Shown in pieces: positions 5,681 through 63,830 of a stretch of 64,000 nucleotides of DNA. The stretch's first letter is position 1. The number at the start of each line of letters is the position of its first letter. The notes under the pieces were generated by a model. It did no database searches and had not been told where the DNA came from. It saw only the letters and a program-made list of their open reading frames with translations. The DNA is taken from NCBI GenBank assembly GCA_024679065.1, contig JAGIQG010000006.1, positions 8,246,001 through 8,310,000 on the forward strand. Direction: 5' to 3'. The stretch is from Sphyrna mokarran (Eukaryota). Position numbers and translations under genes: made by a program.

Positions 5681-6309
5681 AAAATTCAGTTATCGAGTCT
5701 GGAATTAGCCTCATTGTTGTTAACAGTAAAACTAACATCACTGGTTGTTAAAAACCCACCTAGTTCATTAATGTTCTTTTAGAGAAGGAAATCTGCTGTC
5801 CTTAGCCGGTCTGGCCTACATGTTACTCCAGAGAAACAGCAATGAAGGATGGGCAACAAATGCTGGTGTTATCAGTGATGGTGCATCCTATGAATGAATA
5901 AAGCAAGGGAGACTTAAGAGAGGAAAATCCAGAGTTTAGAGACAGTCAGCTGGAGACGCAGACACTAATGTTAAAGCAAAGGCAGTGGGAGGTTATATTT
6001 AACAGGCTACAGGAATAAGGGGCAGAATTGGACACTCTCCCAGAATTTCCCACAGGAACCTGGCTCCCAAACCCAAACCCAATCCCACAGTCTGCAGGCA
6101 GGGCCTCAGGATGGGAGACCTGATCATTCACCCATTAAGCTTCACGGGAATGACCTCCCAACATTTGTCCAAGGAGCTCCTCAACACAACACAGTCACTG
6201 ACCAAACTATTCCCCACTCCAGGGATTTCTGCACCAATCACTGTGGCCTATAGCCCTCAGCCATCCTTAACTTTAATTAGGCCTTAGCTGTGGGCCCGAC
6301 TTGGCAAGT

Positions 6310-9300
6310 CCCCATGTGTTTTAATGCGAGGAGTGTGACTGGCAAAACAGATGAACTGAAGGCAATAATGTTCGAGAGGAAGTTAAAAGTGGTGGCGGTG
6401 ACTGAGACGTGGCTAAAGGAAGGGCAGGACTGGCAATTGAATATTCCGGGGTATAAGTGCTTTAGGCATGATAGAGGTGGTTTGAGGAGAGGAGGGGGAG
6501 TGGCGTTATTAGTTAAGGATCACATCATAGCAGTGCAGAAGGAAGGTAGTGTGGCTGAGTTTGGAATTGAGTCGCTATGGGTGGAGTTGAGGAATAGGAA
6601 GGGAGAGGTTACTATGTTGGGTGTGTACTACAGACCGCCCAAAAGTCCACGTGCCATGGAAGAAGGGATATGTAAGGAAATTTTAGATAAGTGTAGGAAG
6701 AATAGGGTAGTTGTAATGGGAGATTTCAATTTCCCTGGGGTAGATCGGAAGGTGCCAAGAGTGGAAGGTGCGGACGGGGAGGAATTTGTACAGTGTGTTT
6801 TAGAAGGGTCCTTGGAGCAGTATGTGGATAGCCCGACTAGAGAGGGGGCTATACTGGATCTGGTTCTGGGGAATGAGCCAGGGCAGGTGGTTGACGTTGT
6901 AGTAGGACAGCATGTGTCTAATAGTGACCACAACTCTGTCTGCTTTAGGGTATTAATGGAAAAAGATGAAGCCTGCCCTAAGGGGAGGGTGTTAAACTTG
7001 GGGGGAGGGCTAGATATAGCCAGATTAGGCAGGATCTTAAGGATACCGACTGGGATAAGCTGTTCGAGGGTAGGTCGACGCTGCACATGTGGGAATCTTT
7101 CAAGAGAAAACTAAAATTTTTGCAGGATAGACACGCGCCGGTAAGGAGGAAGGATGGGAAGGGTAGGATTAGAGAACCGTGAGTTACTAGGGATGTTGAG
7201 GACTTGGTCAAGAAGAAGCAGGAGGCGTAGGTTAGATCCAGGCAATTGGGGACAGAGGCAGCGCTGGAAAAATATAGAGAGTGTAGACGGGATCTTAAAA
7301 GGGGTGTCAGAAAAGCAAAAAGGGGCCACAAAATGGCTTTGGCAGGTAGGATTAAGGAAAATCCTAAGGCATTTTACTCCTATGTAAGGAGCAAAAGGAT
7401 GGTTAGAGGGAAGATTGGACCTCTCAGGGACAGAGGAGGGGATCTATGCTTAGAGCCTGAGGGGATGGGGGAGATCCTGAATGAATACTTTGTGTCAGTA
7501 TTCACGCGAGAGAGGGGCCTGATGTCTGATGCTGGCTTTGAGGATTTTGAGGACCCGTTAAAGGAAATAATCATTACAAGGGACGAAGTGTTGGGGCTTT
7601 TAGGCAACATAAAGACTTATAAAGCTCCGGGGCCTGCTAAGGGAGGTGAGAGATGACATTGCTGGGCCTCTGACGCAAATCTTTGTCTCTTCTTTGGACA
7701 CAGGTGAGGTCCCAGAGGACTGGAGGATTGCAAATGTAGTACCGTCGTTTAAAAAAGGGTCAAAGGGATAACCCAGGGAACTATAGGCCGGTGAGCTTGA
7801 CTTCAGTTATAGGTAAGCTAATGGAGAGGATCCTCAGGGACAGGATGTATGAGCATCTGGAGCGCTGAGATCTGATCAGGGATACGCAGCATGGCTTCGT
7901 TAAGGGGAGGTCGTGCCTTACGAACCTAGTGGAATTTTTTGAAGAGGTGACAAAAACGGTTGATGAAGGACAAGCCGTTGATGTCGTCTACATGGATTTC
8001 AGTAAGGCATCTGACAAGGTTCCCCATGGTAGGCTGATAAAAAAGGTGAAGGCGCATGGGATACAGGGCCAGGTATGTAGATGGGTTGAGAACTGGCTTG
8101 GGAGGAGAAGACAGCGGGTAGTAGTGGAAGGCTCCTTTTCCAACTGGAGGTCAGTCACTAGTGGTGTGCCACAGGGCTCAGTACTAGGACTTCTTCTATT
8201 TGTGGTTTATATAAATGACTTGGAAGAGGGGGTAGGTGGTGTGATCAGCAAATTTGCTGATGACACTAAGATGCTTGGATTGGCGGGGACTGAGGAGCAG
8301 TGACAGGCAATACAACAGGACATAGACAGGCTGGTAGACTGGGCAGATAGATGGCAAATGGAATTTAATCCGGATAAATGCGAGGTGATGCATTTTGGCC
8401 AGAATAATGTAGAGGGGAGTTATAGGATAAAAAGTAAAACTATCCGGAGTATAGAGACGCAGAGAGACCTGGGGGTGCAGGTTCACAAGTTTCTGAAGGT
8501 GTCAGTACAGGTGGAGAATGTGATAAAGAAAGCGTATGGTATGTTAGCCTTCATAGGAAGGGGTATAGAATACAAGAGTAGGAGTCTGATGTTGCAGGTG
8601 TATAGAACGTTGGTTAGGCCTCACTTGGAGTACTGCGTCCAGTTCTGGTCGCTGTACTACAGGGAGGATGTGGAGGCCCTGGAGACAGTGCAGAGGAGAT
8701 TTACCAGGATGCTGCCTGGTATGGAAGGGCTGTCTTACGAGGAAAGGTTGAACGCACTGGGGTTGTTTTCCGTTGAAAGACGTCGGCTGAGAGGGGATCT
8801 ATTAGAGGTATATAAGATTATGAGGGCTATAGATAGAGTAAATGGTGGTAAGCTTTTTCCACCATTAGATTCGGATAGAACGAGGGGTCACGGCCTTAGG
8901 GTGAGGGGGGCTAGGTATAAGACTAATATTAGAGGGCATTTTTTCACACAAAGGGTAGTGGGGGTGTGGAATGCACTACCGAGTAAGGTGGTGGGAGCAG
9001 GCACGCTAGGGTTGTTTAAGGGTCTCTTGGACAGCCACATGAGCAGTCTGCAGATAGAGGGATATAGTAGGACTGTCTAAATATCTTATTTGTTTCCACA
9101 GGCTATTCGGTCCACCTTGTTGACCAACAAGGCGCATGCATTCGGCAGGTCGTGCGAGGGCTGCTCTTGGATGTTACTTCAGGAGTGGCCTAGTGCTTCA
9201 TGTCGGTAGTGTATGCTTAAACTGGACCATCAGATGGGCAACATGACAGCTCAGAGACTATCGCTGTTGCTGTGCAGACACATGGATTTGGGCCTGTGTC

Positions 9301-9512
9301 TGCGGGAGTTTGCGCGTTCTCCCCGTGGTCGCATGGGTTTTCTCCGGGTGCTCCGGTTTCCTCCCACATCCCAAAAATGTGCTCTTAAGCTGATTGGGTA
9401 ACAAATTGTCCCTATATTGGTCTCTATATGTCATTAAGACGTTAGGATGGCGGCGCGGGCTCGTTGGGCCGAAGGGCCTGTTTCCCGTGCTGTGTTGTTC
9501 TTTGTTCTTTGT
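6310..9512 (+). mobile_element. Young CR1 LINE ORF2 (APE endonuclease + RT, frameshifted) with extended 3' module (structured domain + captured V-SINE) and (GTTCTTT)n tail
   Basis: ORFs 6290-7114 (NARS..VTETW..GDFN..SDH), 7246-7656, 7929-8303 (GVPQGS..FADD) and 8358-9080; module at 9090-9512. Confidence 0.93.
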
Positions 9513-12800: not shown

Positions 12801-15089
12801 GTTACAAAGGGGCATGGATAAGCTGCAGAACTGGGCTGAGAGATGGAAAATGGAGTTTAATGTGGTAAAGTGTGAAGTGATTCACTTTGGAAGGAGTAAC
12901 AGGAATACAGGGTACTAGGCTAATGGTAAGCTACTTAGTAGTGTGGATGAGCAGAGAGATCTCGGTGTACATGTGCATAGATCCCTGAAAGTTGGCACCC
13001 AGGTTGATAAGGTTGTTCAGAAGGCATACGGTGTGTTAGGTTTCATTGGTAGAGGGATTGAATTTCAAAGAACAAAGAACAAAGAGCAACACAGCATGGG
13101 AAACAGGCCCTTCGGCCCAACGAGCACACGCCGCCGTCCGAACGTCTTGATGACATATCCTTGACTTTAGGCTATGCCTATTGTTGAAGATTCCCATATA
13201 GGGACCAATATAGGGACAATTTGTTACCCAATCAGCCTAAGAGCACATTTTTGGGATGTGGGAGGAAACCGGAGCACCCGGAGAAAACCCACGCAACCAC
13301 GGGAGAACGCGCAAACTCCCGCAGACACAGGCCCAAATCCATGTGTCTGCACAGCAACAGCGATAGTCTCTGAGCTGTCATGTTGCCCATCAGATGGTCC
13401 AGTTTAAGCATACACTGACGACGTGAAGCACTAGGCAACTCCTGAAGCAACCTCCAAGAGCAGCTCTCGCACGACATGCCGCATGCATGCCCCTTGTTGG
13501 TCAACAAGGTGGACCGAATTGCCTGCGGAAACAAATAAGACTTAATTAATCATGCTAAAAAAAAACTAAGACATTCCCGAGACGAAACTAAAAGATAGTC
13601 TACTACTATTTGGTCCTCCCGATATTCAAACAGTCCTGCTATATCCCTCTATCTGCAGACCGCTCATGTGGCTGTCCAAGAGACCCTTAAACAACCCTAG
13701 CATGCCTGCTCCCACCACCTTACTTGGCAGTGCATTCCACACCCCCACTACCCTTCGTGTGAAAAAATGCCCTCTAATATTCGTCTTATACATAGCCCCC
13801 CTCACCCTGAGCCCGTGACCCCTCGTTCTATCCATTTCTAATGGTGGAAAAAGCTTAACACCATTTACTCTATCTATACCCCTCATAATCTTATATACTT
13901 CTAAAAGATCCCCTCTCAGCCGACGTCTTTCAAGGGAAAACAACCCCAGTGTTTTCAATCTTTCCTCGTAAGACAGCCCTTCCATACCAGGCAGCATCCT
14001 GGTAAATCTCCTCTGCACTCTCTCCAGGGCCTCTACATCCTTCCTGTAGTACGGCGACCAGAACTGGATGCAGTACTCCAGATGAGGCCTAACCAACATT
14101 CTATACACCTGCAACATCAGACTCCTACTCTTGTATTCTATACCCCTTCCTATGAAGGCTAACATACCATACGCTTTTTTTATCACATTCTCCACCTGTA
14201 CTGACACCTTCAGAGACTTGTGAACTTGCACCCCCAGGTCTCTCTGCATCTCTATACTCCGGATAGGTTTACCTTTTATCCTATAACTCCCCTCTACATT
14301 ATTCCGGCCAAAATGTATCACCTCGCATTTATCCGGATTAAATTCCATTTGCCATCTATCTGCCCAATCTACCAGCCTATCTATGTCATGTTCTATTGCC
14401 AGGCACTGCTCCTCAGTACCCGCCAATCCAATCATCTTAGTGTCATCAGCAAATTTGCTGATCACACCACCTACCCCCTCTTCCAAGTCATTTATATACA
14501 CCACAATTTCGGAGCCATGAGGTCATGTTGCAGCTGTACAAAACTCTGGTGTGGTCATACTTGGAGTATTGCATACAGTTCTGGTCACCACATTATAGAA
14601 AGGATGTGGAAGTATTGGAAAGGGTGCATAGAAGTTTACCAGGATGTTGCCTGGTATGGTGGGTAGGTCTTATGAGGAAAGATTGAGGGACTTGGGGTTG
14701 TTTTCATTAGAGAGAAGAAGATTAACAAGTGATTTAATAGAGGCATACAAGATGATCAGAGGATTAGATAGGGTGGATAGTTAGAGCCTTTTTCCTCGGA
14801 TGGTGATGGCTAACACGAGGAGACATAGCTTTAAATTGAGGGAGTGATAGACATAGGACACTTATGAGAGGTAGGCTCTTTACTCAGAGGGTAGTAAGGG
14901 TATGAAGTGCCCTGCCTGCAGCAGTTGGACTCGTCAACATTAAGGGCATTTAAATGGTCATTGGATAAACATATGGATGATATTGGAATAGAGTAGATTA
15001 GATGGGTTTTAGATTGGTTTCACAGATCGGTGCAACATAAGGACCAAGGGGCCTGCACTGCGCCGTAATGTTCTACGTTCTATGTTCTC
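9870..15089 (+). mobile_element. Near full-length older CR1 LINE: ORF1 remnant (Cys/Zn-finger-like start, SGNH/GDSL esterase-like domain) and ORF2, interrupted by a nested CR1
   Basis: SCGMFEV..SCRKC at 9884-10066; decayed DSVVRG..VCCLPG..HIGTND at ~10290-10465; EN at 10880-11510; RT at 12072-13060, resuming at 14511; tail at ~15050-15089. Confidence 0.85.
13067..14504 (-). mobile_element. Young CR1 (same subfamily as 6310-9512) nested in the older CR1, with 3' module
   Basis: 292-aa RT C-terminal ORF 13626-14504 nearly identical to 8200-9080; module at 13067-13540; TSD AATTTC at 13061-13066 and 14505-14510. Confidence 0.93.
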
Positions 15090-18039: not shown

Positions 18040-18920
18040 GGGTGACACGGTGATTAGCACGGCTGCCTCACAGCGCCAGGGACCCGGGTTCAATTCCAGC
18101 TACGGGTCACTGTCTGAGTGGAGTCTGCACGTTCTAATACAGCTAAACGGGAAAGAGTGCAGAAAAAATTTACCCGGATGATACTGGGACTTGACGATTT
18201 GAGTTATGAGAGGCTGGATAGATTGCGACTTTTTTCTCTACAGTGCACACAGCTGAGGGGTGATCTTAAATAAGTCTATAAAACAATGAGAGGCACAGAT
18301 CAGCCAGATAGTCAATATCTTCTTCCAAATGTAGGGGAGTCTAAAACTAGAGGGCATAGGTTTAAGATGAGAGGGAAGAGATATAAAAGTGTCCAGAGGG
18401 ACAATTTGTTCACACAGAGTGTGATGAGTGTCTGGAACAAGCTGCCAGAGGTAGTAATAGAGGTGGATACAATTTTGTTTTTTAAAAATTAGATAGTTAT
18501 ATGGATATGGTGGGTATAGAGGGATATGGGCCAAATGCAGGCAACTGGAATTAGCTGTGGGTTTTTAAAAAACAGGTGGCATGAACAAAGAACAAAGAAC
18601 AACATAGCACGGGAAACAGGCCCTTCGGCCCAACGAGCCCGCGCCGCCGTCCTAATGTCTTAATGACCGAAGGGCCTGTTTCCATGCTGTAAACCTCTAT
18701 GACTCCATTCTCCCTGTGTCTCTGTGGGTTTCCTCTGGACACTCCGGCTCCCTCCCACATTCCAAAGATGTGTGGGTTAGGTTGATTGGCTGTGTTAAAT
18801 CGATCCTAGTGTTGGGAGATTACTGGGATAAATGTGTAGGGTTACGGGAATTGGTGGGATTGTGATCGGTGCTGGCTTGATGGGCCGAATAGCCTCTTCC
18901 CGCACTGTAGGGATTCTAGG
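18040..18920 (+). mobile_element. HE1-like SINE split by a CR1 3' fragment (~18136-18705), which itself holds an inverted 80-nt tail of the module-bearing CR1 (~18583-18667)
   Basis: SINE head ends ..GCACGTTCT at ~18135 and resumes TTCTCCCTGTG at ~18708; the inner tail matches 9431-9512 in reverse. Confidence 0.75.
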
Positions 18921-27180: not shown

Positions 27181-27205
27181 ATTAACAAAGAACAAAACAG
27201 CATGG

Positions 27206-29440
27206 GAAACATAGAACATAGAACATAGAACGATACAGCACAGAACAGGCCCTTCGGCCTTCGATGTTGTGCCGACCAAAATAAAAAGCAATGCCCCTCC
27301 AAACTAAACCATTCCCTTCTCTTCCATATCAATTAACCTCTTAAACGCCACCAAACTTGCGCATCTACAACAGCTGCAGGCAGGGCATTCCACTCCCTAA
27401 TCACTCTTTGAGTAAAGAACCTACCTCTGATATCCGTCCTATAACTCATACCCTTAATTTAAAGCTGTGTCCCCTCGTGCTAGCTTTCTCCATCCTAGGA
27501 AAAGGCTATCACTGTCCACCCTATCTAAACCTCTAATCATCTTATATGTTTCGATTAGGTCCCCTCTTAGCCGCCTCCTTTATAACGAAAACAACCTCAA
27601 ATCCCTCAGCCTCTCTTCATAAGACCTGCCTCCATACCAGGCAACATCCTGGTAAACCTCCTCTGTACCCTCTCCAATGCCTCCACATCTTTCTTATAAT
27701 GTGGGGACAGAACTGCACACAATACTCCAAGTGCGGCCGCACTAGAGTTTTGTACAGTTGGAACATGATGCTGCGGCTCCTAAATTCAATCCCCCTACCA
27801 ATAAAAGCTAAGACTCCATATGCCTTCTTAACAACTTTATCCACTTGACTGTCTACTTTCAGGGATCTATTGACACATACACCAAGATCCTTCTGTTCCT
27901 CAACACTATTAAGAGCCCTACCATTAGCCCTATACTCTACACATTTATTGTTCCTGCCAAAGTGCATTACCTCACACTTTTCCACATTAACCTCCATTTG
28001 CCACCTCTCGGCCCAGCTCTGCAACTTGTCCAAGTCACTCTGTAAACTAAAACACCCTCTTCACTATCTACCACACCACCAACTTTAGTATCATCTGCAA
28101 ATTTACTGATCCATCCCTCAATACCCTCATCCAGATCATTTATAAAAATTACAAACAGCAGGGCCCCAAAACAGACCCCTGAGGCACACCACTTGTCACC
28201 GAACTCCACGATGAATATCTCCCATCAACACCACCCTCTGTCTTCTATCTGCCAGCCAATTCCTAATCCAATTAGCTAAATCACCCTCTATTCCACACAT
28301 CTGCATTTTCTGTAGAAGTCTTCCATGGGCCACCTTATCAAATTCCTTACTAAAGTCCATATATACTACATCAACCGCCTTACCCCCATCCACCTCTTTG
28401 GTCACTTTCTCAAAAAACTCAATGAGGTTAGTAAGGCCTGACCTACCCTTCACGAAACCATGCTGACTATCCCCAATCAATTCATTTCTCTCTAAATAAC
28501 TATAAATCCTATCCCTAATAATTCTCTCAATACCTTGCCCACCACAGAAGTAAGACTCACTGGCCTATAATTCCCAGGAAGGTCTCTCTTCCCCTTCTTA
28601 AACAATGGGACCACATTCACTATCCTCCAGTCCTCCGGAACCACACCCGTAACCAACGAGGACCTGAAGATCAGAGCCAGAGGCTCTGCAATCTCCTCTC
28701 TTGCCTCCCAGAGAATCCTAGGGTAAATCCCGTCCGGCCCGGGGGACTTATCCAACTTCAAACCCTCGAGAATTTCTAGCACATCCTCCCTATCTACTAC
28801 AATACTTCCCAATTTGCAACCCTGTACCTCAGTGTTCTCCATAGCTACATTTCCAGCACTCTGTGTGAATACCGAAGAGAAATATTTATTCAGTGCCTCA
28901 CCAATCTCTTCAGGCGCCACGCACAACTTCCCACTGCTGTCTATGACTGGCCCTAATCTTGCCCTAACCAATCTTCTATTCTTAACATATCGAAAGAAAG
29001 CTTTAGGATTCTCCTTAATCCTATCATCCAACATCTTCTCGTGTCCCCTCTTAGCTCTCCTCAATTCACTTTTTACCTCCTTCCTGGCTAATCTATAGCT
29101 ATCCATTGCACTATCTGAGCCTTCAAGCCTCATCCTGACATAAGCCTCCTTTTTCCTTTTAACCAGCAAATCAACTTTTTCGTACACCAAGGTTCTCTTA
29201 CTCGACCATTTCCTCCTTGCCTGACAGGGACATACTTATCAAGGACTCGCAGCAGCTGCTCCTTGAATAAGCTCCACATTCCAGATGTTCCCAGTCCCTG
29301 TATTTTCCTAGTCCAATCTATGCACCCTAATTCTCTCCTGATGGCCTCATAATTACCCTTCCCCCAGCTATAACTACTGCCCCCAGCTTCATGCCTATCC
29401 CTGTCCATCACTAAGGTGAATGTAACCGAATTGTGGTCAC
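27206..29440 (-). mobile_element. CR1 LINE ORF2 fragment with (AGAACAT)n tail
   Basis: ORFs 27617-28033, 27967-28209, 28196-28480 and 28492-29190. Confidence 0.9.
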
Positions 29441-30697
29441 CAACAGGCCCTTCGGCCCAACGAGCCCGTGCCACCATCTCGATGTTCCCACTTCTACCCA
29501 TGATCCCTGTCTATGTTTATAGATCTATGAATTGGAACCAAATTTGAGCCAGTTTAGGGAGAATTTGTTCTGCTAATCAGCCTAAGAGCACATCTTTGGG
29601 ATGTGGGAGGAAACCGGAGCACCCGGAGAAAACCCACGCAAGCACGGGGAGAATGTGCAAACTCCCACAGACACAGGCCCAAATCCATGTATCTGCACAG
29701 CACAGCGATAGTCACTGATCTGTTGTGTTGCCCATCAAATGGTCCAGGTCAAGCGTTTACTAACGACGTGAAGCACTAGGATACTCTCGAAAAATCCAAG
29801 AGCAGCCCTCTCACGACCCATCGCATGTATGTTCCTCATTAGACAACAAGTCGCCCTTCATCGACTGTTTTCATCACCTCCTCAAAACATTCTACCAGAT
29901 TCGTAAGGCACGACCTCCCCATAGCAAATCCATGCTGCTTATCCCTAATCAGATCGCAATGCTCTAAGTGCCTATACATCCTATCCCTAAGAATCCCCTC
30001 CAACAGCTTTCCTACCACTGATGCCAAATTCACTGGCCTATAATTCTCAGGGTTATCCCTACTACCCTTTTTAAACAACGGTACAACATTAACTATTCTC
30101 CAGTCCTCTGGGACCTCACCTGTGTCCAAAGAAGAGACAAAGATTTGTGTCAGAGGCCCAGCAATTTCACCTCACACCTCCGTAAGCAGCCTGGGATAAA
30201 TGCCATCAGGCCCAGGAGATTTATCAGGTTTAATACTACCTAGAAGCTCTAACACTTCCTCCCTCGGTATGGATATTTCCCTCAACTGGTCCACAGCTCC
30301 CTCAGAGACAGGACCGGTCAACAAGCCCCTCTCCTTCGTGAATACCGACACAAAGTATTCATTCAGGATCTCCCCCACTCCCTCGGGCTCTAAGCACAGT
30401 TCCCCTTCTCTGTCCCTAAGAGGTCCAATTTTTCCTCTAGCACCCTTTTATTCCTAACGTAGGAATAAAAAGTCTTTGGATTTTCTTTAATCCTATCTGC
30501 CAAAACCATTTCATGTCCCCTTTCTGCCCTTCTAACTCCCTGTTTGAGCTCCCTCCTACTCTCTCTATATTCCTCCAACGCTCTCTCCGTTCCCAGCTGC
30601 TTTGACCTATCATACGCCTCTCTTTTCTTCCTCACCAAATCCTCAATATTCCTGGTAATCCACGGCTCTCTAATCCTACCTTTCCCATCCTTCCTCA
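29441..30697 (-). mobile_element. Internally deleted CR1 carrying a divergent version of the 3' module
   Basis: ORF2 pieces 30390-30698, 30172-30378 and 29839-30129 join directly to the module (29441-29850). Confidence 0.85.
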
Positions 30698-31089
30698 TGG
30701 ATAGAGGATTGGCTAATTGATAGAAACTCTATCAGCATCTTCACATTGTAATTGAAAGAAGACAGAGAGTTGGGATTAGTTGGGTGTTATGTTGGTACAG
30801 TTGTACAGTGATTAGCACTGCTGCCTCAGCGCCACGGATCTGAGTTCGATCTGGGCCTTGGGTCACTGTGCAGATTCCACACATTCTCCTTGTGTCTGCA
30901 TGGGTTTCCTCCGGGTCCTCCACAGTCCAAAAGATGTGCTGGTTAGGTGGATTGGCCACGCTAAATTCTCTCTCAGTGTACCTGAACAGGTGCCTGACTG
31001 TGGCAACTAGGGAATTGTCACAGTAACTTCATTGCAGTGTTAATGTAAGCCTACTTGTGACACTAATAAACGACCTTAACCTTAAAAGA

Positions 31090-32160: not shown

Positions 32161-32796
32161 AATGTCCCTGACATCAAGGCCCCATTTTCCTGAGTGTGGT
32201 ATCAAGGATCCCTGTAAAACTGGAGTCAATGATTGCACGACGTTCAGCACCATTCACCACTCCTCAGATACTGTAACAGTCGATGCTCAAATGCAGCAAA
32301 ACCTGGACAATGTCTTATTTTATAAACACGTTAAAGGGAAGAGGTTGGTCAGGGGAAGTGGCCGGCCCATTAGAGACTGAGGGGACAACCTGTATGTGAA
32401 ACTTCAGGACTTTGGAAGGGTGATTTAAATCAATATTCTCATTGGTCTTCACTCAGGAAAAGGAGAACGTAGGTATGGACTTCAGGAAAAGGGACTGGGA
32501 GGACCTTGCAGAGTTTAACATCAGAAATGAGGAGGTATTGGAGGTTCTGACAAGTTTAAAAATGGACAAATTCCCAGGCCTGGATGAATTGCATCCCAGG
32601 CTGCTGTAGGAAGCAAGGCAGGAAATTCCGGGGGCTCTGACACAACACGTTAATTCTTCTCTGGCCACGGGGAGGTGCCAGAGGACTGGAGGACTGCTAA
32701 TGTGGTTCTACGTTTCAAGAGGGATGGTAAAAATGAATTCAGAAATTACACTGAGTCTCAGGTCAGTGAAAGAGAAACTATGGGAGAAAATTCTGA

Positions 32797-33039
32797 GTAA
32801 GAATTTAGCAACACCAATTTTAAATCCAACCGATTTATTTGATAGTAAAATTACGAGCTTTCGACACTCTGTGTCTTTGTCAGGCAAATGCAGTGTTACA
32901 CTGCATTTGCCTGACAAAGACACAGAGTGTCGAAAGCTCGCAATTTTACTATCAAATAAATCGGTTGGATTTAAAATTGGTGTTGCTAAATTCTTACTGA
33001 GTTCTTACTACCTCAGTCCAACTCCGGCATCTCTACATC
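32797..33039. mobile_element. Penelope-like (pLTR-derived) fold-back insertion: 101-bp inverted arms plus a ~40-nt tail
   Basis: Arms 32796-32896 and 32898-32998 (1 mismatch, 1-nt loop); 12-bp TSD AGAAAATTCTGA at 32785-32796 and 33040-33051; contains AATAAA and a hammerhead motif. Confidence 0.8.
32907..32943 (+). ncRNA. Minimal type I hammerhead ribozyme motif (G8A variant); mirror copy at 32851-32887 on the minus strand
   Basis: UUGC-CUGACAA-A-GACAC-AGA-GUGUC-GAAA-GC-UC-GCAA: stem I, core, stem II, GAAA, palindromic mini stem III and UH; the core reads CUGACAA instead of CUGANGA. Confidence 0.7.
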
Positions 33040-34537
33040 AGAAAATTCTGAAGCAGAGGATTAATCTCCACTTGGAAAGGGATGGGTTAATTAGGGATAG
33101 TCATTATGGATTTATCTGAGGGTGGGGTCATGCCTAACAAATTCATTAAAAAGTTTCAAATATGTGATCAAGTGTGTGGATCAGGGAAATTGATGTAATT
33201 TATATGGATTTTAGCAAAGCCTTGACAAGGTCCCACATGGGAGACTGCTTGAGAAGTTTGAAGCACACAGAATTCAGGGAAACTTGGTGAGATGGATCCA
33301 GAACTGGCTCGGTAATAGGACATGGAGATAGTGGTTGAGTGATTAGAATGTGGGGTTTAGTGATGCACTAAAGGTTCAGTACTGGGAACTGTTATTATTT
33401 GTTATATACATCAGTGATGTAAGTGAAAATGTGGGGGAGTGATTAGCCAGTCTATAGATAACACCAAGATTGGTAGGACGATTAATAACGAAGAATGTGG
33501 TCATAGATTACAGGAAGATATAAGTGGGCTGGACAGATGGACAGGGCAGTGGTAGATGACGTTTAACCCTGATAAGTGCGAAGTGATGCACTTTGGAAGA
33601 AATAACAGGACAAAGGAATATTTAATGAATGCCAGAACACGAGGAAGCTCAGAGGAAGAGAAGGATTCTGGGGCACTTATTCTGGAAGATGGAAGAGCAA
33701 GTGAATAGTTAAAGGGCATGTGGGACAGTTACTTTTATCAGTCATGGCATAAAGTATAAGAGCAAGGAGGTCATGGAGAAGTTGTACAGAGTGTGGGTTA
33801 GGCGACAGCTGGAGAACTGTGGGCAGTTCTGGTTGCCATGTTATGGGAAGGATGTGATTGCACTGGAGGGGGTGCAGAGGAGATTCATCAGGATACTGCC
33901 TGGGTTTGGAACAATTGAGCTACAAGGAAAGACGGGATAGGCTTGGATTGTTTTCCCTTGAGTAGAGAAGGCTGAGGGGGGGATATGATTGAGGTGTATA
34001 AAGACTATGTGAGATACGGACAGGGTGAGTAGGGAACAACTGTTCCCCTCGGGTGAGGGGTCAGTCACGAGGTGATACAATTTTAGGATGAGGGGCGATT
34101 CAGAGGGGATTTGAGATTTTTTTTTCACTCAGAGGGTGGTGGGAATCTGGAATGCGCTGCCTGGGAAGGTCGTGGAGGCCGAAAACCTTACAACTTTAAA
34201 AAATATTTAGATAAGCACTTGAAACACCAGAACATTCAAGAATATGGAACAAGGGCAGGAAGACGGGTACCTTTAGTGGTAGTTATTGTTGGTGCAGACT
34301 CGATGGGCTGAAGGGCTCTTTCTGTTGTGTATGTCTCTGGGAAGGAACTGAAATGTAATTTTTATATCTTCCTCTTTCTAGTCTCCTAATGTTGAGCCAG
34401 CTGCTTCCTCTATTAGCACAGTGACTCATCCAGTCAGTGTTCAGTCTGATGTTAACTCGGCTGAATTAGTGCATTAATCACAAGGCATCCTGCTCAATGA
34501 TTCAGCATCTCACTTCAACTCTTCTCTTTGCTCTCAG

Positions 34538-34921
34538 GCCCACCCACCATCCTCAACACGTCCATCCAAGTTATTAATGACACACAGTTTACCTTCTTGT
34601 GCCTGGCCAGAGGGGAACCCACCCCGAACATCGTGTGGCTCGACCCCCAGAACAACAGCCTCCCCATCAATGGCAGCAACACGCCAGTGAGGCCAGGCCC
34701 AGGGAAGTACCAGGTGCTGGGGGAATTACACGGCCCAAAGCTTAGTGGGAACTACACCTGCAAGGCCACCAACAACCGAGGCAACGTCACTCACATCATC
34801 TTCTTCGCTGGCCTCAGCGAGGGCCGCGTTCTGCTGAAGGTTATCATCGGAGTTTTAATTGGGAGCCTCCTTTTAATAATCCTGATTGTTATCGTTCTTG
34901 TGATGTGGAAGAGGAAAAGCG
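34538..34921 (+). CDS. SIGLEC15-like: Siglec-15-like gene, exon 3: Ig C2-set domain plus transmembrane helix
   Basis: Acceptor ctctttgctctcag|, donor AGCG|GTAAGG, phase 1/1; PPTILNTS..FLCLARGEPTPNIVW..GNYTCKATNNRG then VIIGVLIGSLLLIILIVIVLVMW-KRKS. Confidence 0.92.
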
Positions 34922-56695: not shown

Positions 56696-57552
56696 TCATG
56701 AAGGCCTGATCAGAAGGAAGATCATGTTACATTGCAGAGCAGGCTCGAAGGGCTGAATTGGCCACTCTCATTCCTAATTTCAATGTTCCGATCTGACATA
56801 CACCAAGGATATGGGACAAGGGATTAGCTGGAAAATGGGATTAGTGTGGCCTTCATGGTTGATTTTGTCAGTGCAGGTTCGATGGGCCAAAGGGCCTTTT
56901 CTGTGCTTTGAGATTACTCTATATTAAGGAGTTGTTGAATTGAGCCCCTTGTAAACCTTGCTTGTCCCAAAACCATAAAACCCTGTCCAAGTTCAACAGA
57001 CTTTCCCATTATCTGCCCCTTGCCCACTCCATTTCCCACGACGGGTGGGATGGTGAAATTCCGACCATTATTCTTAATTCTCTTCCCCCAATCGAGAGAC
57101 ACACAAGGCAACTTTTTTTTCACCTATTTTTGAATAACACCTGATGTTGGAGGGATGGAGAAGGGTTATTTTTCCCTGGAACAGATCCCTATTCTATATC
57201 CATCAGGCCTGATCAGGAGATTCTGCTGCTCACCTTAGGAAAAATGGGAAAGATTCACAGAGATTCCAACCAAAACTCCATTCACTCACATTGGCATCAG
57301 AGAATCCCAGCCTGGGAACAGGATCGACGTTTAAGACCCATGTCTCAAATTATTCATATACTGCATCCAAAAAATATTATTTCCTGGAAGAAATCCAGTC
57401 AGGAAGCCAAGTACCCTCTGTTACTGATAGGCTGCCCCCACTGAACTGATAACTGAATGAGAGGCTGGAGTTCAGCCAAAACAAATCCCCTGTCTGATAA
57501 ACTGGTCACAATTTAACTTGGCACAGCAAAAGTGCTGCCTTTTGGCTAGTGA

Positions 57553-57862
57553 AGGGTGGCATGATGGCACAGTGGTTAGCACTGCTGCCTCACAGTGCCA
57601 GGGACCCTGGTTCGATTCTTGGCTCGGATCACTGTCTGTGTGGAATCTGCACATTCTCCCCATGTCTGCATGGGTTTCCTCCGGGTGCTCCGGTTTCCTC
57701 CCACAATCTGAAAGACGTGCAGGTTAGGTTGATTGGTTGTGCTAAATTGGCCCTTAGTGTCAGGGGGACTAGTAAGGTAAATGGGGTTGTGGGGGTAGGG
57801 TTTGGGTGGAATTATGGTCGGTGCAGACTCGATGGTCTCACTCTGTACTGTAGGGATTCTAT
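57553..57862 (+). mobile_element. HE1-like V-SINE, full length
   Basis: A box TGGCACAGTGG, B box GGTTCGATTC, V-domain and CR1-like tail. Confidence 0.88.
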
Positions 57863-59589
57863 GTAAACCTTGAGATGTTGAGAAAATTTCCTGCTGCACT
57901 TGATCCCAGTAATTTCACCAGGGTTTCTCCCATTGCTAACCCCTGACTCTCACCACCCCCTGACACCCCCTCACTAATGACCCCAGCACTGGAGTGAACA
58001 GGGGCACAATGAGAAGCCCAATTCACAGTCATTGTTCTAAAGGATCCATAACTCTTTGTTTTGCCAGTTGCAGTGAGCTGAGAAGTTTAACACTGAGTTA
58101 GAGAAAGAATCTGAGTTAATGGCTATCTTTTAGTTGCTATTCCTTACCTGTCTCTTCTTGGTAAGGGTTTTGAATGTTAACATTACTGTACACAGACTCT
58201 TCTTTAGGTTTCTGTGGCCCTGGAAAGGATACAATCGTTGTTATCTGCAAACCTTTTATACAACTAAATAGCAAAGCAATAAATCCAACAATAACTCGCA
58301 TTTACCTAGCACCCAAAACACAGTGAAATGTCCCAAGGCACTTCTCAGGAGAGCTAATCAAAAACAGTTTGACACTGAGACAAGAGTAGAGATAGTAGAG
58401 ATAAGGGGGCTACTTTGGGGGCATTCAAATGGTCGGTGGATAGGCATATGGATGATATTGGAATAGTTTAGGTTAGAGGGTCCACTGGCCGGCGCAACAT
58501 CGAGGGCCGAAGGGCCTGTACTGCGCTGTAATGTTCTATATTCTATGTTCTAAGGACACAAGGGTTAGCCGTCAGAGCAGGCCATTCGGCCCATCAAACC
58601 CACTCTGCCATTTCATAAGATCATGGAAATACAGAAAACAGAAGTAGGAGGTAGGTCATTTGGCCTTTCCAGCCTGGTCTGCAATTCATTATCATCATGG
58701 CTGATTATCCAACTCAATAACCTGATATGCCCTTTCTCCCTTTAGTCACAAGAGCTATATCTAACTATTTCCTGGAATCACATGTTCTGGCCTCAACTAC
58801 ACTCTATGGTAGCGAATTCACCGCCCACTGGGTGAAGGAATTTCTCCTCACCTCAGTTCTAAAAGGTTTACCCCTTATCCTCAAACTATGAACCCTAGTT
58901 CTGGACCATCGGGAACATTCTTTCTGAATCTGCCTCATCAAAACTTGTTAGAATTTTATAAGTTTCGATGAGATCCCCTTTCACACTTCTAACCTCCAGT
59001 GAATATAATCCTAACTGACTTAGTCTCTCCTCTTATAAGGGACCTGCCATCCCAGGAATCAGCCTGGTAAACCTTCACTCCCTCTACAGCAAGGGCATCC
59101 TTCCTCAGATAAGGAGACTGATTGATTGGATTGTGAGTTTAACTCCACTTTCCGACCTGTTTCCCAAAACCCTCGAATTCCTGTGAGTTTTGTGAGTCTT
59201 GAATCTTGAAATGACTCGAAATCTACCAGATCTGCCATCAAACTCCTCACAGTGAGCAAGCCAGCAAACTTTAAAGCCCAATTCGTTACACATACAGAGT
59301 ACTTGGCCAGTCATCATTCATTGAAAATGGTGTCTGATTGTGTCATGATAATTGACACTCACGCGTACCGTGCTCACAAATGCCGCTGCGCTGTCTGACT
59401 CCCTGCTGGCTGAGAGGCCTGCTCTGGAGGAGTGAAGGAGGTAAAGCTACGAGCCCAGTGCTGCTGCTGAGGTCAACTTGTTGAATAATGCTGCTGAGTG
59501 TCTGATTCCTCAACTGGGTGTCCCGACTTTAACAATGTGGGAAAATGTCCCACAGCTTAGACTGGATTCATCTGGGGGGAGGGGAGAGG

Positions 59590-60165: not shown

Positions 60166-61042
60166 CTGTTCCTCCAGCGGGGTCAGTCACCTGTTTTGAT
60201 TTGATTTATTATTGTCACATGTGTTAATATATAGTGAAAAGGGGAGAGCTTTTGCTAACCCAGCTGGAGTGAACTCCTGGTGGAGGAGGGGTGGGGCGGG
60301 GAGGTTGATAGTGGGCCCAGTGATTTCAGTCCCGGGTCCATTAACCAGATGCAAATTCAATTATAAATATTGAAATCAGACCCACGTCGCTGATGCTGCT
60401 ACAAATTTTCATCAATTTTCTGACATGCCACTGATCTTTGTGAATTATACATTTTTTCTTTCAGTTGATACTATCTTTAACTTTCTTAGAACGAAGAACA
60501 AAGAAGATTACAGCACAGGAACAGGCCCTTCAGCCCTCCAAACCATTGACCTGACTTAACTAAAACCCCCTACCCTTCCAGGGACCATATCCCTCTACTC
60601 CCATCCATGTCAAGATGCTCCTTAAAATACACTACTGGATCTGTTTCCACTACCATCCCCAGCAGCGAGTTCTAAGCACCCTCCACCCTCTGTGTAAAAT
60701 ACTTGCCTCATACTTTTCCTTTAAATCTTGCCCCTTACACCTTAAACCTGTGCCTTCTAGTAATTGATTTTTCCACTCTGGGAAAAAGCTTCTATCCAGT
60801 TAGCCCCGGATGGTGTGTCCTCCTCCTAGAGTCTTTTTAGCGGAATGTAACTTTACTCAGTGTTATAAAATATCTCCTTAAATGTCTGCATCTACATCTG
60901 TAACTGATCTTCCCTTGAAGCTAATTTCCCAGTTTGCGTTAGTTAGCTGCATCTCACAACCTTGCAATTATGTTTATTCAACTCTAGCACTCAATCTGAT
61001 TTTTTCTCTCTCAAACTGTTTAATTTGTTTAAATACTTTAAT

Positions 61043-61466
61043 TGTTTCCACCGGCTATTCGGTCCACCTTGTTGACCAACAAGGTGCATGCATTCGGCAG
61101 GTCGTGCGAAGGCTGCTCCTGGAGGTTACTTCAGGAGTGGCCTTGTGCTTCACGTCGTTAGTGTATGCTTAAACTGGACCATCAGATGGGCAACATGACA
61201 GCTCAGAGGCTATCGCTGTTGCTGTGCAGACACATGGATTTGGGCCTGTGTCTGCGGGAGTTTGCGCGTTCTCCCCGTGGTTGCGTGGGTTTTCTCCGGG
61301 TGCTCCGGTTTCCTCCCACATCCCAAAAATGTGCTCTTAGGCTGATTGGGTAACAAATTGCCCCTATATTGGTCTCTATATGTCATTAAGACGTTAGGAT
61401 GGCGGCACGGGCTCGTTGGGCCGAAGGGCCTGTTTCCCGTGCTGTGTTGTTCTTTGTTCTTTGTTC
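61043..61466 (+). mobile_element. Copy of the CR1 3' module (structured domain + captured V-SINE + tail) with no adjacent ORF2
   Basis: Highly similar to 9090-9512; the upstream ~240 nt is unrelated to the other copies. Confidence 0.88.
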
Positions 61467-62045: not shown

Positions 62046-63830
62046 AGAACATAGAACATAGAACACTACAGCACAAACTGGCCCTTCGGCCCACAAGTTG
62101 TGCCGAACACATCAAAACCTACCCAGCCATAGACCTATCTATAACCCCCAATCCCATTGGATCCCATATACTCATCCAGAAGTCTTTTAAAAGACCCCAG
62201 CGAGTTCGCCTCGACCACCACCGACGGCAGCCGATTCCATTCACTCACCACCCTCTGAGTGAAAAACTTTCCCCTAGCATCCCCTCTGTACTTGCTTCCC
62301 TGCACCTTAAATCTGTGCCCTCTCGTCGCGACCATTTCAGCCCTGGGAAATAGTCTCTGAGAGTCCACCCTATCTATTCCTCTCAACATCTTGTAAACCT
62401 CTATCAGGTCGCCTCTCAACCTTCGTCTCTCCAGGGAGAACAGTCCCAGCTCCCTCAACCTGTCTTCATAAGGCATGCCTCCCAATCCAGGCAACATCCT
62501 TGTAAATCTCCTCTGCACCCTTTCAATAGCTTCCACGTCCTTCCTATAGTGAGGCGACCAGAACTGCGCACAGTACTCCAAGTGTGGTCTGACAAGGGTC
62601 CTATAAAGCTGCAGTATTACCTCCTGACTCCTGAACTCAATCTCTCGATGAATGAAGACCAGTACACCATAAGCTTTCTTAACCACATCCTCCACCTGGG
62701 AGGCCGATTTGAGAGTCTTATGGACCCGGACCCCAAGATCCCTCTGCTCTTCCACACAGCTAAAACTCCTACCTTTGATAGTGTACTCATTCATCCCGTT
62801 GGATCTGCCAAAATGGACCACAACACATTTATCCGCGTTGAAGTCCATCTGCCACTTCTCCGCCCAGTCTTGCATCCTGTCGATGTCATGCTGCAACTTC
62901 TGACATCCCTCCAGACCATCCACAACACCACCGACCTTCGTGTCATCGGCGAACTTACTCACCCATCCCTCCACTTCCTCATCCAGGTCATTTATGAAAA
63001 TGACAAACAGCAAGGGTCCTAGAACAGATCCCTGGGGCACTCCACTGGTGACCGACCTCCATGCAGAAAAAGAGCCATCCACAACCACCCTCTGCCTTCT
63101 GCAGGCAAGCCAGTTCTGGATCCACAAGGCCAAAGCCCCTTGGATCCCATGGCCTCTCACCTTCTCAAGAAGTCTTGCATGTGGGACCTTGTCAAATGCC
63201 TTGCTGAAGTCCATGTACACCACGTCCACTGCTCTTCCTTCGTCAATATGTTCAGTCACATTTTCAAAGAACTCAATTAAGCTCGTAAGGCACGACCTGC
63301 CTTTTACAAAACCATGTTGACTATTTCTAATCAACCTAAACTTCTCCAAATGCTCGTAAATCTTGTCCCTCAGAAGACTCTCCATCAGCTTACCAACCAC
63401 TGAGGTCAGACTCACCGGTCGGTAATTTCCAGGACTATCCCTGTTCCCTTTCTTGAAAATAGGGACCACATCCGCAATCCTCCAATCCTCCGGAACCTCT
63501 CCCGTCTCCATCGACGACGCAAAGATCATCGCCAGGGGCTCTGCAATGACATCCCTCACCTCCCACAATAACCTGGGGTACATCCCATCTGGTCCCGGAG
63601 ACTTGTCTATCTTGATAGCATTTAAAAGTTCTAACACATCCGCTTCCTTAATATCTACATACTCAATCTTTTCAGTCTGCCGCAAACTTGTAGTGCATCC
63701 TCCCAGATCACTTTCCACTATGAATACTGAGGCAAAGTACTCATTAAGCACCTCTGCCATTTCTTCCAGTTCCATACAGACATTTCCCCCTTCACCTTTT
63801 ATAGGTCCTATCCCTTCTCTTCTCATCCTT
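62046..63830 (-). mobile_element. Young 5'-truncated CR1 LINE with an uninterrupted 563-aa RT ORF
   Basis: ORF 62135-63826: KSPGPDG, YRPVSLTS, QHGF, DFSKAFD, GVPQGSVLGP, FADD; (AGAACAT)n tail at ~62046-62066. Confidence 0.95.

What the first reader, a model, noticed from the sequence alone, without database searches (positions are those of the whole stretch)
9236..9512. A CR1 LINE subfamily has captured a V-SINE as its 3' UTR, losing the Pol III promoter but keeping the V-domain
Seen in sequence: directly downstream of the ORF2 stop, the CR1 copies at 6310-9512 and 13067-14504 carry the same SINE-like segment in sense orientation. A divergent version occurs at 29441-30697 and a solo copy at 61043-61466. 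Segment 9236-9292 aligns without gaps to the tRNA head of the free HE1-like SINE at ~57554-57610 at only about 33/57 identity by eye. The A box is mutated (CAGCTCAGAGA versus TGGCACAGTGG) and the B box (GGTTCGATTC) is deleted. The V-domain that follows is strongly conserved, with TCCGGGTGCTCCGGTTTCCTCCCACA identical in the free SINE and all four copies. Established knowledge: SINEs normally borrow their tail from the partner LINE, and the function of the V-domain is unresolved. Inference: the direction is reversed here. The LINE acquired a whole SINE and propagated it through at least two subfamilies, and the promoter eroded while the V-domain was retained. That suggests the V-domain acts in cis at RNA level to benefit retrotransposition.
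Basis: partly seen in the sequence, partly recalled or inferred. Interest (0 to 1): 0.85.

Follow-up and report, generated by a model that had tools for sequence, protein, structure and literature searches.

The report
CR1 LINE carrying a V-SINE module
A family of shark-type CR1 jumping genes carries, inside its 3' untranslated end, a piece copied from the small parasitic V-SINE elements that normally borrow from it, and the famous conserved V core of that piece has stayed almost unchanged between two branches of the family.

Summary
A CR1-clade LINE (endonuclease and reverse transcriptase domains, ORF2 stop at 9078-9080) has a 432-nt 3' UTR. Its last ~290 nt run colinear with free V-SINEs of the same window: a weak head-like part, the V-domain, about 45 nt of body, and the tail hairpin. 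Six independent 3' ends of this family lie in the 64 kb.

Other CR1 lineages here have short UTRs without a V-domain, and they sit on both sides of this lineage in an ORF2 tree. The module is therefore a gain by the LINE.

Capture of a whole SINE is only suggestive. The head match passes anchored shuffle tests in one subfamily (2 of 3000; 5 of 3000). It fails in the divergent copy (172 of 3000) and in unanchored tests.

Between the two subfamilies, ORF2 DNA is 78.7% identical but a 51-nt piece holding the V core is 50/51. The head remnant is also kept (59/67), so it is not simply eroding. No special RNA fold was found for the V block.

Six literature searches found no report of this arrangement. 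Dfam and Repbase could not be checked. Two unchecked first-stage notes describe the same thing elsewhere in this genome.

The parts
6290..9080 (+). Copy c1: ORF2 of the CR1-clade LINE (endonuclease, reverse transcriptase, C-terminal domain), broken into several frames; stop at 9078-9080
   Evidence: ORFs. Pfam PF03372/PF14529 and PF00078. CR1 relatives and in the tree.
9081..9225 (+). LINE-specific 5' part of the 3' UTR (U5). It resembles neither SINEs nor other CR1 UTRs in the window.
   Evidence: nhmmer finds only the four copies of this family. Predicted fold is more stable than shuffles, z = -2.88. It is 71-73% identical between subfamilies.
9226..9292 (+). Head-like segment, colinear with the 5' tRNA-related head of free V-SINEs. 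The A-box region is altered and the B box is missing (18-19-nt gap). Together with the first bases of the next segment it forms an 8-bp perfect hairpin at 9274-9303.
   Evidence: 33/57 ungapped. Anchored tests: 2 of 3000 and 5 of 3000 shuffles reach the score. Not significant unanchored and not in c3. Hairpin seen.
9293..9368 (+). V-domain (central conserved domain of V-SINEs), ending with the 26-nt core that is identical in four LINE copies and one free SINE
   Evidence: Mean identity to 13 free SINEs is 76-81%, the same range as free SINEs among themselves.
9369..9445 (+). Post-V body. The first ~45 nt can be aligned with the body of free V-SINEs. The rest is the most variable part of the UTR (61% identical between subfamilies, with indels).
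   Evidence: 15 of 3000 shuffles reach the score. (weak in-register hits on three free SINEs)..
9446..9512 (+). CR1-type 3' tail: a long stem enclosing a small hairpin, then 2-3 GTTCTTT repeats. The same kind of tail is found on V-less CR1 copies and on the free SINEs.
   Evidence: Fold z = -3.07. 35/37 identical between subfamilies.
13067..14504 (-). Copy c2: 5'-truncated, with ORF2 C-terminal 292 aa plus the same UTR. It has about 78 extra nt after UTR position 5 and a 41-nt extra stretch in the post-V part.
   Evidence: 94.6% identical to c1 over 884 nt of ORF2.
29439..30700 (-). Copy c3: the divergent subfamily. ORF2 part is 78.7% identical to c1. It lacks the equivalent of c1 7970-9115 (internal deletion). 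The UTR runs from position ~19, and the 3' end is cut inside the tail.
61034..61466 (+). Copy c4: 5'-truncated at the ORF2 stop codon, so it holds the whole UTR only
18584..18666 (-). Copy c5: the last 83 nt of the UTR only
27184..27209 (-). Copy c6: the last 26 nt of the UTR, directly after the (TTCTATG)n end of another CR1 copy
57545..57872 (+). Free V-SINE used as comparator: A- and B-box motifs, V-domain, and a tail ending in ATTCTATG. It is one of 15 free copies in the window.

Best explanation
This is an autonomous-type CR1-clade LINE family of an elasmobranch-like genome. Its master lineage took up V-SINE sequence between its own short 3' UTR and its 3' tail.

The UTR is built as follows:
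- 145 nt specific to this LINE;
- a ~67-nt head-like remnant with no working Pol III boxes;
- the 76-nt V-domain;
- about 45 nt of SINE body;
- a variable linker;
- the CR1 tail hairpin with GTTCTTT repeats.

The most likely origin (inferred) is one of two events. Either reverse-transcriptase template switching occurred between a LINE RNA and a SINE RNA that share the same tail, or a SINE inserted into the UTR of a master copy. After that the chimera kept retrotransposing as a LINE.

What is shown: at least six independent insertions with different 5' truncation points and the same 3' end lie in 64 kb, in two subfamilies.

How it works: the LINE's reverse transcriptase presumably recognises the terminal hairpin and repeats, as in other stringent-type LINEs (inferred by analogy). 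The V core and the tail are the two parts of the UTR that stayed nearly unchanged between subfamilies while ORF2 itself diverged by 21%. I therefore read the V core as being under constraint inside the LINE, as a cis element of unknown partner (inferred, about even odds).
For: LINE identity:
- EN and RT domains.
- CR1 relatives among 2083 hits at E <= 1e-20.

Colinearity with free SINEs:
- Shown: - V-domain identity to 13 free SINEs is 76-81% on average, as among free SINEs themselves (68-83%).

The module is a gain:
- Six V-less CR1 3' ends that could be tied to an ORF2 row of the tree (near 62073, 35042, 3421, 21012, 16871, 27217) run from the ORF2 stop through a short spacer straight into the tail.
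- In the ORF2 tree of 37 rows, the V-carrying clade (SH-aLRT 96) sits inside a chondrichthyan clade (98), with those V-less copies on both sides.
- None of 57 more distant CR1 loci from metagenomes matched the UTR pieces beside the core at E < 0.1; one weak match (E 0.37) was found. 13 of the 57 have at least 300 nt of 3' flank.

Retrotransposition of the chimera:
- Copies c1, c2, c4, c5 and c6 end in the same tail with 2-3 repeats and have different flanks.

Constraint (c3 against c1):
- ORF2 664/844.
- A 51-nt piece holding the V core 50/51 (Fisher p = 2e-4).
- Head plus V 144/159 (p = 3e-4).
- Tail 35/37 (p = 0.02).
- U5 90/127.
- Post-V 37/61.

Head similarity:
- 2 of 3000 shuffles reach the score; 5 of 3000 (c1).
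- 4 of 10 weak hits of a head-only query fall in free SINE heads, a count reached by 2 of 400 shuffles.
Against: Head homology is fragile:
- Pairwise local alignment is no better than shuffles (1042 of 3000 reach it).
- A head-only profile of 14 free copies finds none of the 4 LINE copies.
- In c3 the anchored alignment stops at the V-domain (172 of 3000).
- Mean head identity to free SINEs is only 50%.

The tRNA origin of the free SINE head could not be shown here:
- ARAGORN found 0 genes.
- No Rfam tRNA hit appeared in three tries.

The constraint argument rests on two subfamilies and single copies from one window. Exchange of the block between LINE lineages, or conversion by the many free SINEs, would give the same picture.

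The head-V block shows no unusual RNA stability (z = -0.75).

No copy outside this window could be read, and no other species.
Confidence: 0.68

Rival explanations
1. Reverse direction. The body and tail of the local V-SINEs, V-domain included, were copied from the 3' UTR of a LINE like this one, with a tRNA head added in the ordinary way SINEs are born. The head-like match in the LINE is then chance.
For: - The head match fails unanchored tests and fails in c3.
- Homology between LINE and SINE runs from the V-domain to the very 3' end, as expected of a SINE made from a LINE UTR.
- Kojima 2018 argues that SINE bodies can come from LINEs (PMC5786205, sections 23-24 read).
- The V-carrying ORF2 clade branches deep enough that its sister clade holds both ray and shark sequences.
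Against: - V-less CR1 lineages flank this clade in the tree, so several losses would be needed.
- The V-domain is reported in SINEs of lamprey, teleosts, lungfish, cnidarians and bivalves (PMC4824008 passages). That is far outside a clade nested within chondrichthyan CR1s.
- Anchored head tests give p of about 0.001-0.002 in the c1 type.
Confidence: 0.12
2. The LINE took up only a 5'-truncated SINE (V-domain and body). The 67 nt before it are LINE sequence of other origin, kept because they form a hairpin.
For: - Head identity is only 50% on average, against 51-69% among free SINEs.
- c3 shows no head extension.
- The segment holds an 8-bp perfect hairpin whose two changes in c3 keep pairing as G-U.
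- U5 just upstream is also structured (z = -2.88).
Against: - Anchored tests in c1.
- Enrichment of weak hits in free SINE heads in the right register.
- The similarity starts at about position 6 of the SINE model, which is what a full-length SINE would give.
Confidence: 0.25
3. The near-identity of the V core between LINE subfamilies is not selection on the LINE. It results from sequence exchange: template switching between co-expressed LINE RNAs, or short-tract conversion by the very numerous free V-SINEs.
For: - The core is identical in LINE copies and in a free SINE.
- About 15 free V-SINEs lie in 64 kb, so donors abound.
- Divergence along the UTR is a mosaic: 61% to 98%.
- The block has no special fold.
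Against: - Both subfamilies keep the same LINE-specific head remnant and the same B-box gap next to the core, so fresh SINE sequence did not replace the block.
- The V 5' half does differ between subfamilies (35/41), and c3 is nearer the free SINEs there. This argues against wholesale homogenisation.
Confidence: 0.3
4. It is not a family trait. One LINE copy was hit by a SINE, and the locus was then copied by segmental duplication.
For: None beyond the small sample of one window.
Against: - Six 3' ends with different flanks and different 5' truncation points, in two subfamilies 21% apart in ORF2, each ending in the retrotransposon tail.
- Two first-stage notes report the same arrangement on other pieces of the genome (unchecked).
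Confidence: 0.02

Closest known systems
HE1 SINE / HER1 LINE pair of sharks and rays (Ogiwara et al. 1999, 2002; seen only as a table row and references in PMC3747384; the originals are not held)
   Same: A CR1-like LINE and a tRNA-derived V-SINE of elasmobranchs share a conserved 3' tail. The free SINEs and the V-less CR1 copies of this window show exactly that relation.
   Different: In this LINE lineage the shared sequence is about 290 nt rather than the tail alone. It includes the V-domain, part of the body and perhaps the head. Sequence has passed from SINE to LINE.
MER6/MER6A MITEs carrying an Ac1-like V-SINE (Luchetti et al. 2019, PMC6887750; abstract and passages read)
   Same: A V-SINE became part of another transposable element, lost a working head, and the V-domain then spread with its carrier.
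   Different: That carrier is a non-autonomous DNA transposon of mammals, with no link to SINE mobilisation. Here the carrier is a LINE of the very clade whose enzymes move such SINEs, and the module sits in the UTR that the enzyme reads first.
LINE-derived middle parts of SINEs (Kojima 2018, PMC5786205; abstract, sections 23-24 and passages read)
   Same: Homology between a LINE and a SINE outside the 3' tail.
   Different: There, 5' parts of RTE and Vingi LINEs entered SINE bodies. No LINE counterpart of any widely conserved SINE domain was found in Repbase. Here a CR1 3' UTR holds the V-domain, and the direction is most likely SINE to LINE.
Chimeric LINE-1 insertions made by template switching (U6/L1, Alu/L1; bioRxiv 10.1101/2025.02.02.635956, passages read)
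   Same: The likely way two RNAs are joined during target-primed reverse transcription.
   Different: Those chimeras have the small RNA at the 5' side of a truncated L1 and are dead on arrival. Here the foreign part lies inside the 3' UTR of a lineage that went on amplifying.

Membership tests
CR1-clade non-LTR retrotransposon (LINE) | Apurinic-type endonuclease domain at the N-terminus of ORF2 | tested here: met
   PF03372 E 1.2e-11 and PF14529 E 2.3e-9 on 6290-7111.
CR1-clade non-LTR retrotransposon (LINE) | Reverse transcriptase domain, and an ORF2 C-terminal region related to CR1 elements | tested here: met
   - PF00078 E 6.4e-13.
- 2083 relatives at E <= 1e-20, including shark, ray, turtle and bird CR1-type proteins.
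- Nested in a chondrichthyan clade of the ORF2 tree.
CR1-clade non-LTR retrotransposon (LINE) | 3' end made of a hairpin followed by a few short direct repeats, with no poly(A) (feature recalled from general knowledge of CR1) | tested here: met
   Tail fold z = -3.07. 2-3 GTTCTTT units at four copy ends. V-less CR1 copies of the window end alike.
CR1-clade non-LTR retrotransposon (LINE) | ORF1 and an intact 5' end (full-length, autonomous copy) | not tested
   c1 starts at the endonuclease domain and its ORF2 is broken into several frames. No intact copy is in the window.
V-SINE superfamily (applied to the module inside the LINE UTR) | Central conserved V-domain of about 80 nt | tested here: met
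   Exact 26-nt core. 76-81% mean identity to 13 free copies across the V region. nhmmer E 2.5e-10 to 1.9e-12 with a free SINE as query.
V-SINE superfamily (applied to the module inside the LINE UTR) | [quoted passage not shown] | tested here: not met
   The A-box region differs at 3 of 9 specified positions of the recalled consensus. The B box falls in an 18-19-nt gap in all 4 copies. The module is therefore SINE-derived sequence, not a SINE.
V-SINE superfamily (applied to the module inside the LINE UTR) | 3' tail shared with a partner LINE | tested here: met
   The tail matches those of V-less CR1 copies and of free SINEs.
HE1 family (applied to the free SINEs of the window) | tRNA-derived head | tested here: inconclusive
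   A- and B-box motifs are visible. However ARAGORN finds 0 tRNAs, and Rfam gives no tRNA match at E <= 10 on two heads and one whole copy.
HE1 family (applied to the free SINEs of the window) | Sequence match to the published HE1 consensus | not testable with these tools
   No reference sequence was available. Ogiwara 2002 is not held.

The most novel reading that the evidence does not exclude
The V-domain is a cis-acting element that helps retrotransposition by CR1-type machinery, through the LINE proteins or a host factor. An autonomous LINE has taken it back from its own parasite and keeps it under stronger constraint than its coding sequence. If so, this LINE family is a natural test bed for the decades-old question of why the V-domain is conserved from cnidarians to vertebrates.
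Probability: 0.3. Interest if true: 0.85.

Novelty: new variant of a known kind. Interest (0 to 1): 0.6.

Why it matters
SINE 'highly conserved domains' such as V have no known function and, as far as the papers read here say, no known counterpart in any LINE.

A LINE lineage that carries the V-domain in the UTR its own enzyme reads makes the question testable in two ways. It also keeps the core at 50/51 while its ORF2 drifts to 79%.
- By comparative census: does the core track the ORF2 tree with few changes?
- By a with/without reporter assay.

It also reverses the usual flow of sequence between LINE and SINE, and it shows that the partners can recombine through their shared tail.

If a census shows the core varies freely, or if the arrangement already sits in Dfam or Repbase, the finding becomes an ordinary chimeric repeat.

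Tried and rejected
tRNA origin of the heads:
- ARAGORN on the window found 0 genes.
- Rfam at gathering level gave 0 matches.
- Rfam at E <= 10 on the LINE UTR, on the whole free SINE and on two free heads gave only weak miRNA-like or unrelated matches and no tRNA.

Head homology by plain pairwise alignment or by a head-only profile was not significant. The first scoring scheme, was too strict for 58% identity and was replaced.

Reading 3' UTRs of ORF2 relatives in other species:
- The one metagenome scan returned 57 CR1 loci at no more than 66% identity. None resembled the UTR pieces beside the core, apart from one weak match (L036, E 0.37).

As a result the 20 runs of 8 coded organisms that hold part of 8358-9512 could not be resolved into ORF2 or UTR. 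I draw nothing from them beyond 'near-identical words occur in several organisms'.

I considered that the 433-nt UTR is a free non-autonomous element fused to LINEs again and again. I rejected this because c1 and c2 share the same ORF2-UTR junction and differ by an indel five bases into the UTR. c3 is an internal deletion of 1146 nt.

I tried to tell whether the tail came from the SINE or the LINE. The tails are too alike.

Ogiwara 2002 could not be read.

Supplements were closed and I did not ask for them. Two of them may bear on novelty:
- the supplementary tables of Kojima 2018 (all SINE-LINE similarities);
- the supplementary CR1 library of PMC13343379 (elasmobranch consensus sequences).

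Six literature searches gave no report of a conserved SINE domain inside a LINE UTR. One search was an error.
Full report
WHAT IS THERE

The window is repeat-rich vertebrate DNA of the shark type. CR1 relatives from sharks and rays are the nearest named proteins.

At 6290-9080 (+) lies a CR1-clade ORF2, broken into several frames.
- It has an endonuclease domain (PF03372, E 1.2e-11) and a reverse transcriptase domain (PF00078, E 6.4e-13).
- Its stop codon is at 9078-9080, and the element ends at 9512 in two to three GTTCTTT repeats.
- The 432-nt 3' UTR is present in three further copies. c2 is 13067-14504 (-), c3 is 29439-~30700 (-), and c4 is 61034-61466 (+).
- Two short 3' fragments are also present: c5 at 18584-18666 (-) and c6 at 27184-27209 (-).

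The copies have different flanks and different 5' ends.
- c1 and c2 share the ORF2-UTR junction. They differ by a ~78-nt indel five bases into the UTR.
- c3 lacks the equivalent of c1 7970-9115.

This is therefore a LINE family that has retrotransposed repeatedly with this UTR.

THE SINE-LIKE PART

A 26-nt V core is exact at five places: four LINE copies and a free SINE. It occurs at 11 places with up to three mismatches, against none in 100 shuffles.

With a free SINE (head plus V) as query, nhmmer finds 19 matches at E <= 1e-3, made up of 15 free copies and the 4 LINE copies.

The alignments show the LINE UTR from about 9226 to its end running colinear with the whole free SINE:
- a head-like part (9226-9292);
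- the V-domain (9293-9368);
- about 45 nt of body;
- an unalignable linker;
- the tail.

Across the V region the LINE copies are 76-81% identical on average to 13 free copies. That is within the range of free copies among themselves, 68-83%.

The stretch after the V-domain aligns with a score reached by 15 of 3000 shuffles.

IS THE HEAD REALLY THERE?

Against:
- A local gapped alignment of the UTR upstream part with the free head is ordinary. 1042 of 3000 shuffles reach its score.
- The best ungapped 57-mer at any offset is reached by 1 of 300 shuffles.
- A head-only profile of 14 free copies finds none of the 4 LINE copies.
- In c3, with only the 5' half of the V-domain as anchor, the alignment stops at the V-domain. 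172 of 3000 shuffles reach the score.
- Mean head identity to free copies is 50%, against 51-69% among free copies.

For:
- When the V-domain is kept as an anchor and only the upstream part is shuffled, the true sequence scores 53.4 bits against 42.4 +- 1.8. 2 of 3000 shuffles reach it, and the alignment runs back to position 6 of the SINE model.
- With only the 5' half of the V-domain as anchor, c1 gives 15.0 against 5.9 +- 1.5 (5 of 3000).
- A head-only query against the window, with the LINE copies masked, gives 10 weak hits, of which 4 lie in free SINE heads on the right strand. Shuffled queries average 0.09 such hits, and 2 of 400 reach four.

I rate whole-SINE capture as somewhat more likely than not.

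I could not confirm with my tools that even the free heads are tRNA-derived. That rests on the visible A and B boxes and on the literature table in PMC3747384.

In the LINE the A-box region is altered and the B box falls in an 18-19-nt gap in all four copies.

DIRECTION

Other CR1 copies of the window go from the ORF2 stop through a short spacer into the same kind of tail, with no V-domain. Six of them could be tied to an ORF2 row of the tree.

An ORF2 C-terminal tree of 37 rows was built. It used the quick IQ-TREE search with SH-aLRT support only. Four long-branched rows were flagged, and one row was under half filled.
- The V-carrying copies fall in a clade (96) with four unnamed database proteins.
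- That clade lies inside a chondrichthyan clade (98).
- V-less window copies sit on both sides.

Thirteen more distant CR1 loci with 3' flank, out of 57 fetched from metagenomes, show no match to the UTR pieces beside the core, apart from one weak hit at E 0.37. The core itself was not used as a probe there.

The V-domain is reported from SINEs of lamprey, teleosts, lungfish, cnidarians and bivalves (PMC4824008, passages). One gain by this LINE lineage from a V-SINE is therefore the economical reading.

The reverse reading, that the local SINE body was copied from such a LINE, keeps about one chance in eight.

CONSTRAINT

c3 belongs to a second subfamily. Its ORF2 DNA is 78.7% identical to c1 over 844 columns. 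Along the UTR the c1-c3 comparison gives the following:

| Segment | Identical | Fisher p against ORF2 |
|---|---|---|
| U5 | 90/127 | 0.053 |
| Head | 59/67 | 0.08 |
| V 5' half | 35/41 | 0.43 (not significant) |
| 51-nt piece holding the core | 50/51 | 2e-4 |
| Post-V | 37/61 | 0.002 (less conserved) |
| Tail | 35/37 | 0.02 |

So the core and the tail are the best-kept parts, better kept than the coding sequence.

The head remnant is not decaying faster than the rest. Both subfamilies share the same remodelled head and the same gap. The loss of the promoter is therefore an old event, and 'erosion' is not the right word.

At four of five informative sites in the V 5' half, by eye from the alignment rows printed, c3 agrees with the free SINEs and the c1 type does not. 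The c1 lineage is thus the more derived.

Predicted folding:
- It is more stable than shuffles for U5 (z = -2.88), for the tail (z = -3.07) and for the whole UTR (z = -2.95).
- It is not for the head-V block (z = -0.75). An RNA-structure role for the V-domain is thus not supported by this test.
- The head remnant contains an 8-bp perfect hairpin (9274-9303). Its two changes in c3 keep pairing as G-U.

All of this rests on single copies of two subfamilies. Exchange between LINE RNAs, or conversion by free SINEs, is a live alternative.

MECHANISM

Shown:
- A chimeric UTR.
- Repeated retrotransposition of the chimera.
- Uneven conservation, with the V core and the tail at the top.

Inferred:
- The joining happened by template switching during reverse transcription between RNAs that share the tail, or by SINE insertion into a master copy. 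Template switching is documented for L1 chimeras (bioRxiv 10.1101/2025.02.02.635956, passages).
- The tail is the recognition site of the enzyme. This is by analogy with the stringent-type LINEs of eel and zebrafish, whose abstracts I saw in the listing (PMC1636434, PMC4176376).
- The V core serves the LINE in cis.

KNOWN OR NEW

- Kojima 2018 compared all Repbase SINEs and LINEs. Only 5' parts of RTE and Vingi were found in SINE bodies, and the paper states that no sequence similar to the conserved SINE bodies had been found (PMC5786205, sections 23-24).
- Luchetti 2019 describes a V-SINE carried by the MER6 MITE with its head lost (PMC6887750). This is the nearest precedent.
- A 2026 survey of CR1-group elements mentions the UTR once, for 5' repeats, and SINE only once, in its reference list (PMC13343379, passages).
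- Six searches gave no report of a conserved SINE domain in a LINE UTR.
- I could not consult Dfam, Repbase, SINEBase or any supplement.
- Two first-stage notes on other pieces of this genome describe the same arrangement. They are unchecked and are not independent evidence, but they suggest the family is spread through the genome.

LIMITS

I worked beside it.
- The run search shows that 20 runs of 8 coded organisms in 11 studies hold part of 8358-9512. The best holder has a share of 0.83, others of 0.09-0.43, and two rows are on record as RNA. Which part they hold is unknown.

VERDICT

This is a new variant of a known kind, of moderate to good interest.

Noticed in passing
window 27184-27330 (-): A 26-nt 3' terminal fragment of the V-carrying CR1 sits directly after the (TTCTATG)3 end of another, V-less CR1 copy. 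Either this is an extreme 5' truncation, or the insertion was primed on the other element's repeat tail.
   Followed up: partly
window 18584-18700: An 83-nt tail fragment of the V-carrying CR1 lies in opposite orientation inside the hairpin region of another repeat's tail. The tail motif therefore appears on both strands about 30 nt apart (motif starts 18612 on the minus strand and 18664 on the plus strand).
   Followed up: no
window 17010, 19686, 39577, 47752, 49766, 53464, 57680 (V core sites): The free V-SINEs of the window carry at least three different 3' halves after the same head and V-domain. One is a tail ending in ATTCTATG. One ends in TAATAAATAAAC-like sequence. One continues into a CATAGA...ACAGCATGGAAACAGGCCC repeat. 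This looks like tail exchange within one genome.
   Followed up: no
window 9081-9225: The LINE-specific first 145 nt of the UTR fold into a long imperfect hairpin (z = -2.88 against shuffles). Another first-stage note (s1-886828) flags a multi-helix RNA domain here. It is 71-73% identical between the two subfamilies.
   Followed up: partly
window 9318-9324 versus 29652-29646 (-): In the V 5' half the c1-type copies read GCGCG where c3 and the free SINEs read GCACA. This is a gain of two CpG sites in the LINE lineage, which is the opposite of the usual CpG decay.
   Followed up: no
window 57683-57810 (-): Rfam gives a weak match (E 0.1, far below gathering) of the free SINE's V region to a human lncRNA family (ZEB2_AS1_3). 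This fits the published presence of V-like sequence in human MER6 elements (PMC6887750).
   Followed up: no
window 32796-34921: First-stage notes on this window mention a palindrome with hammerhead-like motifs and a Siglec-15-like gene. I did not look at them.
   Followed up: no
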